From the IMG/VR virus record IMGVR_UViG_3300045051_000720, positions 155,465 to 219,464 of that record: a stretch of 64,000 nt of DNA. One strand, given 5' to 3'. Within the stretch, counting starts at the first letter, position 1. Every line of letters begins with the position of its first letter. Positions 18,135 through 42,623 of the stretch are shown piece by piece. The notes beneath the pieces are model-generated. The model saw only the letters and a list, made by a program, of their open reading frames with translations. It ran no database searches and had not been told where the DNA came from. The translations under genes were made by a program, and so were the position numbers.

Positions 18135-18680
18135 ATGAAGACCATCACCCTTCATCGCCTCAAGACCATCCTTGAGAACCTGACCCACGCCACGCCCGTG
18201 GGTGTCATCGCTTTGACCACCGCGGACTGCCGCGCCAAGGGGCCAACCGGCCCCAACCCATGGGGCAAGGATGGCGTCAAGAAACTGACTCGGCTTAACG
18301 CTATGATCGGCACGGACCACGAGCTGTCCATCCAGCGCCAACAGGCCCGCGAGGGTCAGGAAGCCGATTTCCTCGCTGCGCCGCGCTCATGGGGCGTTCG
18401 GATCGGACCGGGGTTGGTTGAGCATAGGGGGCAGTACTATTTGCCTCTCCAACTCAGTCCCGTCAACGCGGTGCGTCCATTATACTTGGTCCCCCGAGAA
18501 CGCGGGGCCAAGACCATCCTCACCGCCGTACCCAAGGAAATCGTTGCACCGTGGTTATCACCCGCGCGGGATGAGCGTGTCTATCAGGGGGTAGTCCGAC
18601 CGGTAGTTAGGCGCGATCTAAGGCTTGACAGTATCGTTAGCATCACTCTTGGCGGGGAGAAGTATCGCATTAGATCTTGA
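18135..18680 (+). CDS. conserved phage hypothetical protein upstream of the pentamer array
   Basis: leaderless ATG 18135; NPWG..VKKLTRLNAMIG..QRQQAREG..F..PRSWG..LVEHRGQYYL motifs. Confidence 0.75.
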   Translation: MKTITLHRLKTILENLTHATPVGVIALTTADCRAKGPTGPNPWGKDGVKKLTRLNAMIGTDHELSIQRQQAREGQEADFLAAPRSWGVRIGPGLVEHRGQYYLPLQLSPVNAVRPLYLVPRERGAKTILTAVPKEIVAPWLSPARDERVYQGVVRPVVRRDLRLDSIVSITLGGEKYRIRS

Positions 18681-18708
18681 CACTAGGCATCGTTTGGCAA
18701 CACTTAAA
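18677..18708 (+). promoter_or_regulatory. probable promoter of the pentamer array
   Basis: TTGACA at 18677, weak -10 (AACACT ~18699); predicted start near 18709 where the array begins. Confidence 0.5.
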
Positions 18709-19105
18709 GGCGGGGCTTGGCAGGGCTGGGCACGGCGGGGCACGGTTAGGCAAGTGTAAGGCAAGGAACGCGGTTCGGTATGGCAACGCGGGGCGACGCC
18801 GGGTTTGGCCGGGCGTGGCCGGGCGCGGCGAGGTTGGGTTAGGCATGGAACATGGTGTGGTGAGGCTGGGTATGGCGGGGCATGAGTAGGGCGAGGAACA
18901 TGGTAGGGCAAGGCTGGGCGCGGCTGAGCAGGGTCAGGTCCGGTACGGCTAGGCTCGGTTAGGCAAGGTCCGGGGCAGCGCGAGGTGTGGCACGGCTTGG
19001 CTGGGCAACGCACGGCCGGGTCCGGCGAGGCAAGGAACGAGGTGAGGTGGGGCAGGGCAGCGCGCGGCGTGGTCAGGCAGGGCTTGGCAGGGCAACGCAA
19101 GGTCC
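18709..19105 (+). ncRNA. GGY-NN pentamer array, candidate guide-RNA locus (VIPR-like)
   Basis: 64 exact GGYNN units plus 7 CGC/AGC variants in 5-nt register, six segments punctuated by GGC(AA/AT/GA)GGAAC; no credible ORF. Confidence 0.85.
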
Positions 19106-19138
19106 GAGGCGCGACGGTCTATCCGCGCACAATTTCTC

Positions 19139-19167
19139 TTGACAGTAGGCTCTAACATCACTACCTT
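19139..19167 (+). promoter_or_regulatory. promoter of RAMP gene
   Basis: TTGACA(19139)-17-TACCTT(19162). Confidence 0.65.
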
Positions 19168-19245
19168 CACATTATCTCCAATAGGCACCTACGCTCAGAC
19201 AATCACGTCAACGAGCATCACTCGTGACCGAACGAGACAACGCAC

Positions 19246-19908
19246 ATGCAAAAGTATAATATCGCACTCGTTGGGGCAAATCCGCTCCTTCTTCATCACG
19301 ACAACATCTCGTGGGCTGGGCTCATGAACGAATGGAATACGGACCCCGCGAACAAAGCCAAGTCCGTCGCGGGCGACGACCGCACTCCCGCTCACCGTTG
19401 GATTGGTTGTCTATACCACGAGGGTGGTCGTCTCATCGTCCCCAGCGATAACCTCATGACTATGCTGCGTGAGGGTGGCGCGCGATGTCCGACTGGAAAG
19501 AAAGGCGCGACGTTCAAACGTCAGACCCAATCCGGGCTGGTTGTCGACCAGAGCGGATGGTCCTTGACTGTTGATGGCAAGGAAATCCCCTATGATCCTA
19601 TTGCCAAGCTTATCGACGAGCCCGACTTCACCAAGCACGAGAAGACGGTAGCGAAGATGGGTTTTGCGCTGTTTGTTAAACGCGCCCGTGTCAACCAGAC
19701 CAAACATGTCCGTGTGCGTCCTCGGTTCGACCGTTGGGAGGCGGCGGGCTCCATTACCGTGTTCGACGATACTATCACTGACCGCGTACTCGAAGACATC
19801 CTCAAGTTTGGAGGTCGTTACGCCGGTCTTGGCGATTGGCGTCCATCATCCCCGAAATCCCCCGGACCATTCGGAACCTTCACGGTGACCGTTTCCCCCG
19901 CATCATGA
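19246..19908 (+). CDS. stand-alone RAMP/Cas7-like protein (Vipr-like candidate effector)
   Basis: N-terminal strand YNIALVGANPLLLH, IVPSDNLMTMLREGG, RVRPRFDRWE strand and C-terminal Gly-rich loop GGRYAGLGDWRP..PGPFGTFTV. Confidence 0.8.
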   Translation: MQKYNIALVGANPLLLHHDNISWAGLMNEWNTDPANKAKSVAGDDRTPAHRWIGCLYHEGGRLIVPSDNLMTMLREGGARCPTGKKGATFKRQTQSGLVVDQSGWSLTVDGKEIPYDPIAKLIDEPDFTKHEKTVAKMGFALFVKRARVNQTKHVRVRPRFDRWEAAGSITVFDDTITDRVLEDILKFGGRYAGLGDWRPSSPKSPGPFGTFTVTVSPAS

Positions 19909-20378
19909 GCGCAACAACCAAACTCTTCGGCGGCGGCGTTCCTACTCAACCCGAGGTTGAAAGCCTGATCAAACGATTTGGTGTTCCTGCGGTAGGGACA
20001 TCGATTCTCTATGTCGATATTGCGGCTACCATTGGACATCCTGTTCGTAGCAATCGCTATCTCGCTGTAGTATCAAGGTGGCGTAAACGTCTGTTCCAGC
20101 AGCATAATCTATTGCTGGACCCTATTCATGGTGAATCCTATACGGTCTGTAACAACAGCCAACGTATTTCCCACAGCACTGGCAAGTACAAAAGCGGCCT
20201 TCGGCATATTCGACGTGCGTCCGAAGTAGCTGCTCGGACCGACACAGAAGGATTGCTTCCCGACGAGATGCGGGCTCGCGACCATATCGTCAAGACCGGT
20301 AATGCTTTGCAGCTAGCGGCGGCCACTGCCGCACGGCAACTCAAATATGTTGCGCCGGGGCTACCTCAGTCAACGTGA
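19905..20378 (+). CDS. RAMP-coupled accessory protein
   Basis: ATGA overlap with RAMP stop; 157 aa, basic, helical. Confidence 0.7.
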   Translation: MSATTKLFGGGVPTQPEVESLIKRFGVPAVGTSILYVDIAATIGHPVRSNRYLAVVSRWRKRLFQQHNLLLDPIHGESYTVCNNSQRISHSTGKYKSGLRHIRRASEVAARTDTEGLLPDEMRARDHIVKTGNALQLAAATAARQLKYVAPGLPQST

Positions 20379-20400
20379 AGATGTCACGTACCGTTTTACC

Positions 20401-20838
20401 ATGACCATCGTTGACACCTCCACCCGCCTCCCCACCACCCCCGGACCCTACGCGGTTCTGGTCAAACCCGCACAGGGCTACCACCGCGCCATTGAGACCG
20501 GCGTGAGCTGGGATGGGTCATGGAAAGGGACCGATGATCCCGTCGTCGCGTGGGTTGACACCGCCGCGCGCGTTGCCGTTGTGCCTTCTCCGACTCAGGC
20601 GGTTGAACCCTCATCCTATTCCCTCACCCTCGTGGGCTTCGATCCTACCAGCAAGATCGGCGTGATCAAGCTCGTGCGCGAGCTGACGGGGCTCGGGTTG
20701 GCTGAATCCAAAGCGACGGTCGAGGCCCTTGCGATCAAACCCCTCATGATCAAGGAGAATGCTTCTCGCGCCGAGGTAACCGCACTGGACACCCGTCTGC
20801 GCGCGGCGGGTGGGGTGACCAAACTGGAGGCCGTATGA
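20401..20838 (+). CDS. ribosomal protein L7/L12 C-terminal-domain fusion protein
   Basis: YSLTLVGFDPTSKIGVIKLVRELTGLGLAESKATVE..P..IKENASRAE..L..AGG matches bL12 CTD; unrelated N-terminal domain. Confidence 0.8.
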   Translation: MTIVDTSTRLPTTPGPYAVLVKPAQGYHRAIETGVSWDGSWKGTDDPVVAWVDTAARVAVVPSPTQAVEPSSYSLTLVGFDPTSKIGVIKLVRELTGLGLAESKATVEALAIKPLMIKENASRAEVTALDTRLRAAGGVTKLEAV

Positions 20839-21053
20839 CCGACCGACTCAAAGGCTGCACTGTGATCTTCGATCACGACATCCGCGTGGATGACGCCGAG
20901 GCCCTACTCAATGCTATACGCATGATCAAAGGTGTCCAATCGGTCGAACCCTCCATCAGCACGAGCGAGGATTGGATGGCCGCGCGCAAGGCGAAGACTG
21001 ATATGATCAATGCCTTCCAGACGTGGCTCAACGAGCAGTGGGACAAGCGATGA
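20835..21053 (+). CDS. hypothetical protein
   Basis: MTDRLKGCTVIFDHDIRVDDAE..IRMIKGV motif. Confidence 0.65.
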   Translation: MTDRLKGCTVIFDHDIRVDDAEALLNAIRMIKGVQSVEPSISTSEDWMAARKAKTDMINAFQTWLNEQWDKR

Positions 21054-21484
21054 ACCGTTCCACTTTTCTCCGTACCATCCTCGCCGCCCCAGCCGCGCTG
21101 TGGGCTTTGACCCGTCCCACCCACGCGGTCGATTGGCGCAAGGAGGTAGACCCCAAGCTACCCCGCGTTCGCGCGGCGGTGTGCTATCAGCGGTTCTACA
21201 CCAAACTGACCGAGCGTGTCGTCCCACTGCGCGGGCCTTACAGTGTGCCGCTCCGAACCCATTGGATTGTCGGAAGTACGGCCGAGGGTGACACCGACCG
21301 CTTCCGCCAGCTCGAACGGTTCGAGCGTGGCGAGTGGGTGGTCGAAGACTGTTGGCGCGAGCAGGGAAGAAAACGCATCAGGGGTTCGCTCCAACTGAAC
21401 CGATGGTCCTACGTCTCTAATCGTGCGTCGTGGGCGCGGGACATCGTTGCTATCGCGCGGTGGTCAGAGTGGGAGACGACATGA
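21050..21484 (+). CDS. hypothetical protein with Tat-like leader
   Basis: MNRSTFLRTILAAPAALWAL. Confidence 0.55.
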   Translation: MNRSTFLRTILAAPAALWALTRPTHAVDWRKEVDPKLPRVRAAVCYQRFYTKLTERVVPLRGPYSVPLRTHWIVGSTAEGDTDRFRQLERFERGEWVVEDCWREQGRKRIRGSLQLNRWSYVSNRASWARDIVAIARWSEWETT

Positions 21485-21992
21485 CCCACCCAACAGATCT
21501 CCGCGATACCGTCAGTTCCCGCATCCGCCGCACGGTCGCGGCCAAGGCTTACAACCGCATCCATGCGTTCAACGCGGGCCGCGCCGAACCCCTCACCGAT
21601 GACGAAACCCACTGCTGGGCGGCGGGCTTCATTCAAGGCTACCTGCTGCGCCGCAACGAGCAGGCCAAGAAGAAGACGCGGTGAACCCCGTCCGTCAGCG
21701 GGTCGTTGAGAACCCAACCCTGATCGTGGACACCACCACCGCCGCGATGGTGGCTTGGCTTCGCGCCGCCGGCTTCGTGGATGGCGATCTCAAGGACATC
21801 TCGGACCGCCCACCCGAGGGCGTGTACCTGCGTCGGGGCACCACCTACGTGTTTATCGCGACCTACGAAGGTCGCTTCTGCGAGGCCATCATCGAGCGAC
21901 TAGACCAACCCAAACAGCCCAAGCGGAGGGTGGTTGGTACTGGGACGATTGCGCGATCGATGGACGAGCTGGTGGTGGTCATAGGGTCTTGA
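21481..21992 (+). other. two small coupled hypothetical ORFs (21481-21684, 21681-21992)
   Basis: ATGA/GTGA overlaps. Confidence 0.55.
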
Positions 21993-40900: not shown

Positions 40901-42623
40901 CAGAATTTCACGCTCGACATCATCTATGACGGCATCGCCGACCCCATGCGCGAGGTATCGCCCGGCCCGTCTAGGGAGAATCCCTGATGGACACGCCGCG
41001 CGGAGCTGCTAGACTACGCCCGATGCACCTCACCTATACGATCAGCCCCGACCGTCGCACCCTCACGATCCGCGCCGATGAACGCACTCGCGTGGAGCTG
41101 CGCGAGTTGCTGGCAGAAAACCCCGACCGTGACAACCTGTGGGACGCTTTCGAGAACCTGATATGCAACAGCGAGCTGGGATGGATCGACCCCGCCACCT
41201 GTGGCGATCTGACGGACGCTCCGATCCTTGGCGTGCTGAGCGATGAACGCCCCGGCAAGGGCCGTGATGGGGACCTTGGAAGCGGGTCCGTCCTCGTTTC
41301 CACTGGGCGCGATGGGTTCACGGTCTGCGATGTGGTCGAACGGTGGGGCTTCATGTCCTACGCCGTGCGCGATCCCCTCGCGGACCTCTGCGACACAGGC
41401 GAGGCCGTTTTCACCGCGCCGTGATGCAAACCCTGCTAGACACTCACGCCGCCGGGCTGCGCGTTGATCGGGTCTCCCCGCACCGTTGGACGGTCTGGGC
41501 TCCTTCCGATCAAGCCGCCGACACCCTATCCCGCGCGCTGCTTCCGTTCATGGACGCCGGGGTTGAAGGCCACGAGTATTGGCGCACCCTTGGCGAGATC
41601 GTGCCTGTGAAGGTGATGCGGAAGGGCAGAGATCGCGTGAGGGTGCTTTCGCCCGGCTACCCGCCGCGCGGGATGTTTTCCAATCTCCGGGCGCTGGAGA
41701 GGGTGTTGACGGTAGGGTGATCTCCCGACTAGACATCCCATCCGGGTCTGATAGACTGCGCCCCGATGAAACACGCTAACGGCTTTTACTATCTCGCCCC
41801 CCTCCTACGCTGCGACACGATCCGCGATCTGCAATGGCGACTGACGCGCAAGGCAGAGCAACGCGATCCTCGCTTGCTGGAAACGGTCGAGGTTCGCCCG
41901 ATGGTATGGGACCGCCGCCACCGCGATCTCGTGGCTCAAGTCCACGCGCAGATCATGGAGCGTTGCAAGCGGTTGTTCCCGCGCCTGTTGCGCTCCTATG
42001 AGTGGATCGCCGAGCGCAACTGCGAACACCTTGCGACGTTGACTCCCGAACAGGCCCGCGCCGCGTTCGATCTGTATCACAACACCGGGTTAAACGGCGG
42101 ATCGTGGGGTTGTCTCGACTGGTTCGAGGTACTGCCCCCGGGTATCACCCATCAAGCCGCCGCCGATGCGTTGGGTGAAGGATTCACTGTTGATCGCGGC
42201 TGGCACAACGAGGGCGGGCGGTCTGTCAAGCGGCATAGTGAGTTCACCCCCGGCGCGGCGAAGCCACGCAAGGGGACAATGGTGGCGAAACGCATCTAGT
42301 GTGATCCCCCTCTGGTATTGACCCAACGATCTGCTATCCTACCCCCCATGACAACCCGCCAACGTTTGACTGAGGATCGCACGCGCCGCGCCAAGGTGGC
42401 GCAACAAGATCGCGTTTTCGCCTATATCGCCGAGCAACGCGCCGCCGATCCCCAAGCGTGGGACGCCAAGGTAAACGCTTTCGTGCTCGCCAACGATTGC
42501 GCCGGGGCCACCCTACAGCCTGACGGCTGGTTCACGGACCCGCAAGGGCGGCGGCTTTACCCCGTGGGCTCGGTGCGCTGGCAATGGGAGGAAGAACGAT
42601 TCGCGGCGGCAGAGTTGGGGTGA
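37936..42623 (+). other. mostly individually promoted hypothetical ORFs (37936-38337, 38385-38870, 38902-39186, 39234-39566 secreted, 39750-39992, 39989-40234, 40278-40487, 40484-40987, 41023-41424, 41424-41720, 41766-42299, 42348-42623)
   Basis: most start 6-8 nt after a -10 box of the palindrome-promoter module. Confidence 0.65.

What the first reader, a model, noticed from the sequence alone, without database searches (positions are those of the whole stretch)
18435..18460. First array segment nearly matches the neighbouring gene when read as a gapped, codon-phased code
Seen: the NN dinucleotides of segment 1 are GG TT AG TG AC GG AC TA AA. Reverse-complemented with one skipped base they give TTnTAnGTnCCnGTnCAnCTnAAnCC. 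Bases 18435-18460 (TAcTAtTTgCCtCTcCAaCTcAGtCC) match 14 of 18, with every skip on a wobble position. The mismatches correspond to conservative changes (F/L-Y-V-P-V-Q-L-N-P versus own Y-Y-L-P-L-Q-L-S-P). Inference: the guide may target the homologous gene of a rival related phage while sparing self, and wobble-skipping would resist synonymous escape. Caution: my rough estimate is ~0.5 such matches by chance per 64-kb window on both strands, so proximity and the conservative pattern carry the argument.
Basis: partly seen in the sequence, partly recalled or inferred. Interest (0 to 1): 0.7.

Follow-up and report, generated by a model that had tools for sequence, protein, structure and literature searches.

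The report
VIPR guide aimed at rival phages' gene
The repeat array is a phage VIPR guide-RNA array (a CRISPR-like system first described in 2026), and its first two guides match a neighbouring gene's versions in related phages far better than the phage's own copy, which fits a weapon against competing relatives.

Summary
The arithmetic is right. Segment 1, read as a reverse-complemented gapped code, matches 18435-18460 at 14 of 18 positions, and every skipped base is a codon third position of ORF 18135-18680. That score alone is chance level: 61-67% of shuffled guides reach 14/18 somewhere in the 219-kb genome.

The location is not chance. The array (18709-19105) and the 220-aa protein at 19246-19908 form a VIPR system (2026 bioRxiv preprints). 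In VIPR, GGY/NN repeat RNAs recognise DNA by a 1-nt-skip rule whose skipped base falls on the wobble position.

At the same nine codons, homologues of ORF 18135-18680 in related, VIPR-less phage contigs score 17/18, 16/18, 16/18 and 15/18. The phage's own copy scores 14/18.

The second guide matches the last codons and stop codon of the same gene in another relative at 23/26 (21/22 in its core). The phage's own copy scores 12/26.

None of 3000 shuffled guides reaches either score. Skips of 0, 2 or 3 bases give only background.

This is a new member of a recently described kind, not a new kind. Targets of guides 3-6 were not found, and no RNA or functional data exist.

The parts
18135..18680 (+). 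181-aa ORF of unknown function. It is the phage's own copy of the gene family targeted by guides 1 and 2.
   Evidence: ORF and translation. 28 homologues found. No Pfam, PHROG or PADLOC match. Its fold matches only uncharacterised AFDB clusters.
18435..18460 (+). Own-copy counterpart of the guide-1 target. 14/18 match, with 4 of 9 dinucleotide units each carrying one mismatch.
18645..18683 (+). Own-copy counterpart of the guide-2 target (last codons plus stop codon). 12/26 match.
18677..18705 (+). TTGACA box with a weak -10 (ACACTT after 17 nt), placed just upstream of the first repeat unit. A possible array promoter; this is an inference.
   Evidence: Read from the sequence. The motif CTTGACA[GC]TA occurs 3 times in this locus and once elsewhere in the genome. 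The consensus scan did not call it.
   Evidence: Target matches.
18754..18771 (+). Junction/tail GTGTAAGGCAAGGAACGC. The GGCRAGGAAC motif recurs at 18847, 18895 and 19034.
   Evidence: The same motif ends runs in the related locus L074.
18772..18846 (+). vrRNA guide 2: 15 units. Units 1-13 match the 3' end of the homologous gene in relatives.
18854..18883 (+). Guide run 3 (6 units); target not found.
18902..18971 (+). Guide run 4 (14 units); target not found.
18974..19033 (+). Guide run 5 (12 units); target not found.
19041..19105 (+). Guide run 6 (13 units); target not found.
19139..19167 (+). TTGACA-17 nt-TACCTT, about 80 nt upstream of vipr. A possible vipr-vap promoter; this is an inference.
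19246..19908 (+). vipr: a 220-aa minimal RAMP protein with a G-loop (GLGDWRP...GPFGTF).
   Evidence: phmmer against PDB 36pp 'SUSP1 Vipr protein', E = 2.8e-5. The family profile hits the same chain at E = 7.7e-41. It matches phrog_4652. Homologues lie next to 81 of 122 GGCNN arrays, 80 of them on the same strand.
19905..20378 (+). Candidate vap (Vipr accessory protein), 157 aa. Its start codon overlaps the vipr stop codon.
   Evidence: Conserved directly downstream of vipr in L071, L047 and L103. The structure model has low confidence (pLDDT 54), with an order of helices and strands compatible with a winged helix. It was not compared with the published vap1-6.
18681..21680 (+). Block of about 3 kb that is absent at this position in related contigs. 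It holds the array, vipr, the candidate vap and four small ORFs.
   Evidence: In L130 and L127 the gene right after the ORF 18135 homologue is the homologue of window ORF 21681-21992. The relatives' loci hold no arrays.

Best explanation
**What it is.** Window 18700-20378 is a VIPR (Viral Interference Programmable Repeat) locus in a 219-kb rhizosphere phage. It has six runs of GGY/NN pentamer units, a vipr gene and a probable accessory gene.

**How the published mechanism works.** Vipr protomers polymerise along the RNA and hold each GGY. They present each NN to pair with double-stranded DNA in which every third base is skipped. The bound complex blocks transcription.

**What is shown here in silico.** Guides 1 and 2 are complementary to two conserved, codon-phased sites in the gene family of the neighbouring ORF 18135-18680:
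- a [F/Y]Y-x-P-x-QLNP motif
- the C-terminal NGERYRVRA-stop

The matches are to the versions carried by related phages that lack VIPR. The phage's own copy is mismatched: 4 of 9 units for guide 1, and 12/26 positions for guide 2.

**What is inferred.** During co-infection or superinfection the phage silences this gene, and probably the genes transcribed downstream of it, in related competitors, while its own copy escapes. The 14/18 self match is the evolutionary shadow of that target, not a functional self site.
For: **Identity of the system**
- Vipr homology to the solved SUSP1 Vipr.
- A period-5 GGY/NN array that is unique in the genome.
- Arrays and vipr co-occur on the same strand in 80 independent viral contigs.
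- Mechanism and the 80% target threshold come from the papers.

**Targeting**
- Site-by-site table. Guide 1: 17, 16, 16, 15, 14, 13, 13 of 18 in seven relatives, and 14 for self. Guide 2, units 1-13: 23, 20, 18, 17, 16 of 26 in five relatives, and 12 for self.
- In each relative's 1-20 kb locus, the top guide-1 hit is the homologous site.
- 0 of 3000 shuffled guides reach 17/18 or 23/26. Skips of 0, 2 and 3 bases give 12-16, which is null level. Guides 3-6 serve as internal decoys and are at null level.
- L128 differs from self at exactly the four self-mismatch positions, and three of those become guide-matching.

**Relatives as plausible rivals**
- They are syntenic phage contigs at 40-63% amino-acid identity without the VIPR block.
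- A diverged copy of the target gene and the identical array both occur in run X3.
Against: - No perfect 18/18 homologue was found.
- The own copy (14/18 = 78%) is only just under the papers' 80% cut-off. Three relatives score no higher.
- The vrRNA ends are inferred from sequence only. No RNA-seq run holds this phage.
- The published experiments are on type II systems with pseudoknot tails. This array is compact, has no significant fold and its type is unassigned.
- The function and essentiality of the target gene are unknown.
- Guides 3-6 have no identified target.
Confidence: 0.8

Rival explanations
1. Pure coincidence: the 14/18 self match and its position are chance, and the array has no relation to the neighbouring gene.
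For: The self score is at the level of shuffled guides. The binomial expectation is about 1.7 such hits per genome. Perfect 18/18 hits in IMG/VR and JGI metagenomes lie outside homologues and follow a random distribution.
Against: The homologous sites in relatives reach 17/18, and 23/26 for a second, independent guide in the same gene. 0 of 3000 shuffles reach these scores, and only the 1-nt skip gives signal.
Confidence: 0.03
2. Autoregulation: guide 1 binds the phage's own ORF 18135-18680 with partial complementarity. This would tune that gene, or read-through into the array, rather than attack rivals.
For: 78% identity is close to the 80% cut-off. The site lies 250 bp upstream of the array on the same transcriptional axis.
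Against: Four separate units each carry a mismatch, and each unit pairs only 2 bp. The first paper reports that perturbing NN pairing abolished silencing and found no self hits of 80% or more in natural systems. Guide 2 matches self at only 12/26, although it targets the same gene family.
Confidence: 0.08
3. Historical footprint only: guides 1 and 2 were copied from an ancestral or neighbouring allele of the flanking gene by an unknown guide-generating process. The similarity reflects origin, not a current function.
For: Both matching guides are the two nearest to that gene. How vrRNA guides arise is not described in the sections of the three papers that I read.
Against: The matches are best to present-day divergent relatives and sit at conserved motifs. 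All informative positions fall on codon positions 1-2, as in validated natural targets. Origin and function are not mutually exclusive.
Confidence: 0.09

Closest known systems
VIPR systems (Vipr + vrRNA; Escherichia phage SUSP1 and the P. fulva prophage, type II). bioRxiv 10.64898/2026.04.26.720920, 10.64898/2026.04.26.720927, 10.64898/2026.10.15.759431
   Same: - A minimal RAMP protein with a G-loop, homologous to SUSP1 Vipr.
- GGY/NN pentamer repeat RNA genes next to vipr on the same strand.
- A small gene directly downstream of vipr.
- Targets follow the 1-nt skip rule, with skips on wobble positions, on either DNA strand.
- Targets lie in related mobile elements, and self-match is lower than non-self match.
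   Different: - The host genome is a 219-kb rhizosphere phage.
- Vipr is only distantly related to SUSP1 Vipr (pairwise E = 2.8e-5 over the C-terminal third).
- The array is compact: runs are joined by 2-18 nt (GGAACNN / GWGTARGGCRAGGAAC), with no roughly 50-nt pseudoknot tail and no significant fold.
- The targets found are alleles of the gene flanking the VIPR block itself, not a satellite, a lysogeny regulator or another VIPR.
- There are no expression or functional data.
Class 1 CRISPR-Cas effector backbones (Cas7 filaments on crRNA)
   Same: A RAMP fold with G-loop and thumb. Protomers polymerise along a guide RNA, and the thumb breaks the guide-target duplex periodically.
   Different: - No CRISPR repeats, no cas1/cas2 and no adaptation module.
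- Period of 5 nt with 3 scaffold bases, against 6 nt with 1 flipped base.
- The guide information is non-contiguous.
- The system is phage-encoded.
TIGR-Tas tandem interspaced guide RNA arrays (recalled from memory; not tested here)
   Same: Phage-associated, non-CRISPR RNA-guided DNA-targeting arrays with short split guides.
   Different: TIGR uses Nop-domain Tas proteins and 36-nt RNAs with two spacers. The protein here is a Vipr RAMP and the repeat is a pentamer.
TRAP-type RNA-binding rings (GAG/UAG triplets spaced by 2-3 nt). Considered early as a mechanistic analogue.
   Same: A protein oligomer reads a conserved triplet repeated with a 5-nt period.
   Different: In TRAP the spacer bases carry no information. 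Here the NN bases carry target information, and the adjacent protein is a RAMP, not a TRAP.

Membership tests
VIPR system | Vipr protein: a minimal RAMP with a glycine-rich loop, homologous to characterised Vipr | tested here: met
   Window 19246-19908 against PDB 36pp_D 'SUSP1 Vipr protein': E = 2.8e-5, aligned through GxGDWRP. A 63-member family profile against the same chain gives E = 7.7e-41.
VIPR system | vrRNA gene(s) of tandem GGY/NN (YNNGG) units, at least 4 and typically 9-16, next to vipr | tested here: met
   Six in-phase runs of 6-15 units at 18709-19105, on the same strand, 140 nt upstream of vipr. This is the only such region in the 219-kb genome.
VIPR system | Targets obey the 1-nt skip rule at 80% NN identity or more | tested here: met
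   Guide 1 reaches 17/18, 16/18, 16/18 and 15/18. Guide 2 reaches 23/26 (21/22 in its core). Skips of 0, 2 and 3 bases are at null level, and 0 of 3000 shuffles reach these scores.
VIPR system | No self target at 80% or more | tested here: met
   The best self hits with degenerate units masked are 14/18, 18/26, 18/26, 14/20 and 17/22, all under 80%. The exception is the 6-unit run 3 at 10/12, which is null level for so short a guide.
VIPR system | Accessory gene (vap) in an operon with vipr | tested here: inconclusive
   ORF 19905-20378 overlaps the vipr stop codon and is conserved after vipr in three related loci. It has no Pfam, PHROG or PADLOC match and a low-confidence model. The sequences of vap1-6 were not available for comparison.
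VIPR system | vrRNAs are expressed, processed to discrete RNAs with a conserved 3' tail, and co-purify with Vipr | not testable with these tools
   Only DNA metagenome runs hold this phage. A short recurrent end motif, GGCRAGGAAC, is seen here and in L074, but there is no pseudoknot and no significant fold.
VIPR type (I-VII) | Placement in the Vipr phylogeny, together with vrRNA architecture and vap class | not tested
   The classification data (data S4) are not held. The architecture differs from type II and may correspond to the 'staggered' compact arrays of fig. S18.
CRISPR-Cas | Direct repeats of 24-40 nt separating contiguous spacers, plus cas genes | tested here: not met
   Tandem-repeat and direct inspection show only a 5-nt period. 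No cas domains occur in the neighbouring genes.

The most novel reading that the evidence does not exclude
The VIPR block behaves like a homing-type selfish cassette. Its first two guides are aimed at the cassette-less allele of its own insertion site. Guide 2 covers the last codons and the stop codon that abut the insertion point in relatives, and guide 1 lies about 245 bp upstream. The carrier's flanking gene is 'immunised' by mismatches. Binding there would silence the rival's downstream operon. It could also stall replication at the empty site and so favour recombinational spread of the cassette during co-infection.
Probability: 0.15. Interest if true: 0.7.

Novelty: new member of a known kind. 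Interest (0 to 1): 0.5.

Why it matters
- This is independent, sequence-only confirmation that the VIPR 1-nt-skip code holds in a distant Vipr clade with a different, compact array architecture, in an uncultured soil jumbo-size phage.
- It gives a concrete guide-target pair with a built-in self/non-self contrast. Natural target sites score 17/18 and 23/26, against self sites at 14/18 and 12/26. These can be put straight into reporter or binding assays to measure the mismatch tolerance of VIPR.
- The targets are alleles of the gene that flanks the cassette in VIPR-less relatives. That suggests allele-directed competition between close relatives. This target class differs from the satellites, lysogeny regulators and rival VIPR loci reported so far.

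Tried and rejected
**Readings rejected**
- *Protein-coding pentapeptide repeat.* All three + frames are broken. The long minus-strand ORF is expected, because the pentamer allows few stop codons.
- *Known RNA family.* Rfam gave no match at gathering thresholds, and only an irrelevant sub-threshold hit in the array.
- *Structured RNA or intrinsic terminator.* Fold z-scores are -0.4 to -1.0.
- *TRAP-like or CsrA-like protein sponge, R-loop replication origin, G-quadruplex tract.* These were early ideas. I dropped them once the adjacent protein proved to be a Vipr and the NN bases proved informative.

**Database tests**
- The exact 18/18 pattern gives one hit in IMG/VR, inside a spurious ORF and not a homologue.
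None encodes a homologue, and the score distribution is binomial.
- So a 'perfect hit in a database' is not an informative test at this pattern length.
- The guide-2 21-base pattern gives 0 hits in IMG/VR.

**Targets of guides 3-6: none found**
- No signal in the own genome.
- No signal in 1.07 Mb of fetched loci.
- No signal in the homologue genes.
- Guide 4 only: no match in the 382-kb phage record G001.
- Guides 4-6: no exact hits of their 9-unit cores in IMG/VR.
- Guide 4 only: five hits in GTDB genomes, all chance level outside the core.

**Other dead ends**
- Function of the target protein: no family match, and only uncharacterised structural neighbours.
- RNA evidence: only DNA contigs of rhizosphere metagenomes are available.
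- A weak second tblastn hit of ORF 18135 at window 42057-42182 contains a stop codon and is spurious.

Full report
**1. The observation**

The window is the last 64 kb of a 219,464-bp IMG/VR virus record. It comes from a rhizosphere metagenome.

- Bases 18709-18753 are nine pentamers of GGC or GGT followed by NN, with NN = GG TT AG TG AC GG AC TA AA.
- Reverse-complemented with one skipped base between dinucleotides, they match 18435-18460 at 14 of 18 positions.
- 18435 is the first base of a codon of ORF 18135-18680, so all skips are wobble positions.
- It is the only hit of at least 14/18 in the window and in the whole genome, on both strands.
- That is what chance predicts: binomial expectation 0.5 per window and 1.7 per genome. 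61-67% of shuffled guides reach 14/18 somewhere in the genome.
- So the description is correct and the score alone is not significant.

**2. What the array is**

- Region 18700-19105 is a period-5 tract of about 69 called GGY/NN units in six in-phase runs of 9, 15, 6, 14, 12 and 13 units. The runs are joined by short motifs, GGAACNN or GWGTARGGCRAGGAAC.
- It is unique in the genome, has no Rfam match and has no significant fold.
- I clustered all flanking ORFs. One protein family of about 200 aa lies within 4 kb of the array in 81 of 122 loci, and in 80 of those it is on the array's strand. The window's member is ORF 19246-19908 (phrog_4652).
- A 63-sequence profile of this family hits PDB 36pp, 'SUSP1 Vipr protein', at E = 7.7e-41. 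The window protein alone hits it at E = 2.8e-5, aligned through the GxGDWRP glycine loop.

**3. What is known about VIPR (from the papers)**

- VIPR was described in 2026 (bioRxiv 10.64898/2026.04.26.720920).
- Vipr is a minimal RAMP protein. The vrRNAs are 9-16 GGY/NN repeats with a 3' tail.
- The NN dinucleotides pair with double-stranded DNA under a '1-nt skip rule'. The skipped base mostly falls on wobble positions, either strand can be targeted, and no PAM is needed.
- Natural targets, called at 80% NN identity or more, are satellites, prophages and other VIPR systems. No self hits reach 80%.
- A cryo-EM paper shows Vipr protomers sequestering GGY and presenting NN in a helical filament (10.64898/2026.04.26.720927).
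- A third paper shows that codon-periodic targeting prevents escape. It also shows that self-match scores are lower than non-self scores (10.64898/2026.10.15.759431).

**4. Does guide 1 target the neighbouring gene's homologues?**

I found 28 homologues of ORF 18135-18680. I fetched DNA for seven distinct homologues with the look-up of encoding contigs and for one more distant homologue, L126, with the search for related loci. At the nine homologous codons the guide-1 scores are:

| Copy | Peptide | Score (of 18) |
|---|---|---|
| L128 | FYMPVQLNP | 17 |
| L253 | LYLPIQLNP | 16 |
| L256 | YYVPIQLNP | 16 |
| L130 | FYLPVQLHP | 15 |
| L129 | FYLSAQMNP | 14 |
| self | YYLPLQLSP | 14 |
| L127 | FFLSAQMNP | 13 |
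| L255 | FYLPAQIQR | 13 |

- In each relative's 1-20 kb locus, the top-scoring guide-1 position is this site.
- L128 differs from self at exactly the four positions where self mismatches the guide. Three of those four become matches.

**5. A second, independent guide hits the same gene**

In guide sense, units 1-13 of run 2 (18772-18836) match the coding strand of the last 12 codons plus the stop codon of the L130 homologue, ...TLNGERYRVRAD*.

| Copy | Score, units 1-13 (of 26) |
|---|---|
| L130 | 23 |
| L127 | 20 |
| L129 | 18 |
| L255 | 17 |
| L128 | 16 |
| self | 12 |

Over units 3-13, L130 scores 21/22.

**6. Controls**

- I scored guides against the eight non-self homologue genes (4.9 kb, both strands, any register).
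- 0 of 3000 shuffled versions of guide 1 reach 17/18. The null mean is 12.0 and the maximum 16.
- 0 of 3000 shuffled versions of guide 2 reach 23/26. The null mean is 15.8 and the maximum 21.
- With 0, 2 or 3 skipped bases the best scores fall to 12-16, which is null level.
- Guides 3-6 are at null level in this gene, so they act as internal decoys.

**7. Context**

- The relatives are syntenic phage contigs at 40-63% protein identity in neighbouring genes.
- In L130 and L127 the gene right after the homologue corresponds to window ORF 21681-21992. About 3 kb (18681-21680) is therefore extra in the window. It holds the array, vipr, ORF 19905-20378 and four small ORFs.
- None of the relatives' fetched loci holds an array.
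- ORF 19905-20378 overlaps the vipr stop codon and is conserved after vipr in the three closest loci that have sequence there. It is the candidate vap. Its model is of low confidence.
- No nuclease domain is detectable in the block.
- The guide-2 target in L130 ends on the stop codon, two bases before the next gene. That is the point where the block sits in the window.
- Run X3 holds both an identical piece of the array and a diverged copy of the target gene, with 11 differences in 91 nt. Relatives therefore co-occur with this phage.

**8. Limits**

- No homologue has 18/18.
- The two perfect hits in public collections are outside homologues and follow a random score distribution.
- The own copy is not uniquely poor.
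- vrRNA boundaries, expression and repression are all untested.
- The target protein has no recognisable function.
- Guides 3-6 have no identified targets.

**9. Verdict**

- The feature is real and belongs to a kind first reported in 2026. It is a new member, with a compact array and flanking-gene alleles as targets.

Noticed in passing
L001:2900-3993 (Mycobacterium phage Donkeykong NC_051648, 36870-37969): A cultured cluster-F mycobacteriophage (host M. smegmatis mc2 155) carries the same kind of locus. The CDS annotated as hypothetical gene 48 is a run of about 70 NNGGC pentamers, so it is probably a vrRNA array and not a protein gene. Gene 49 is a Vipr homologue (family HMM E = 3e-60). The first VIPR paper's text does not mention mycobacteria. 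This would be a tractable experimental system.
   Followed up: partly
L028:6880-7220 (IMGVR_UViG_2681812969_000001): Here the GGCNN runs are separated by tRNA-like minihelices: a T-arm (GGTTCGACTCC) plus an acceptor-like stem ending in CCCA. There is a sub-threshold Rfam hit to mascRNA-menRNA (E = 0.003), and ARAGORN calls no tRNA. This suggests processing by RNase P or RNase Z. The text of the first VIPR paper mentions hammerhead-interspersed arrays but not this architecture.
   Followed up: partly
L015, L045, L008, L047, L074 (arrays): Array punctuation is lineage-specific:
- GGCGTTCAR in L015
- GGCACCGCA in L045
- ATGGTGTGGCAGGC in L008
- a GGCC-GTAT-GGCC mini-hairpin in L047
- GGCAAGGAAC in L074, as in the window

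The number of units per run varies from 5 to 17.
   Followed up: partly
window 18624, 18676, 19138 and 48844: The motif CTTGACA[GC]TA occurs only four times in the 219-kb genome, and three of those are in the VIPR locus. One lies inside the 3' end of ORF 18135-18680, one before the array and one before vipr. The copies may be promoters or repeat scars of the insertion. The fourth copy (48844) is a good TTGACA-17-TAGACT promoter, followed by a leader similar to the one before the array.
   Followed up: partly
window 20347-20838: An ORF in the inserted block has a C-terminal domain matching ribosomal protein L7/L12 (PF00542, E = 5e-14). That is unusual for a phage accessory gene.
   Followed up: no
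window 18618-19100 (minus strand): A 160-aa ORF runs antisense through the whole array. It is a by-product of the pentamer, which allows few stop codons, and gene callers could annotate it as a protein by mistake, as happened in Donkeykong.
   Followed up: yes
L254:1-929 (JGI Ga0620603_000017, a 219-kb contig): A phage contig of similar size carries a truncated homologue of the target gene and an IS605 OrfB/TnpB (Cas12f-like) gene nearby. No VIPR array lies within the 20 kb fetched.
   Followed up: no
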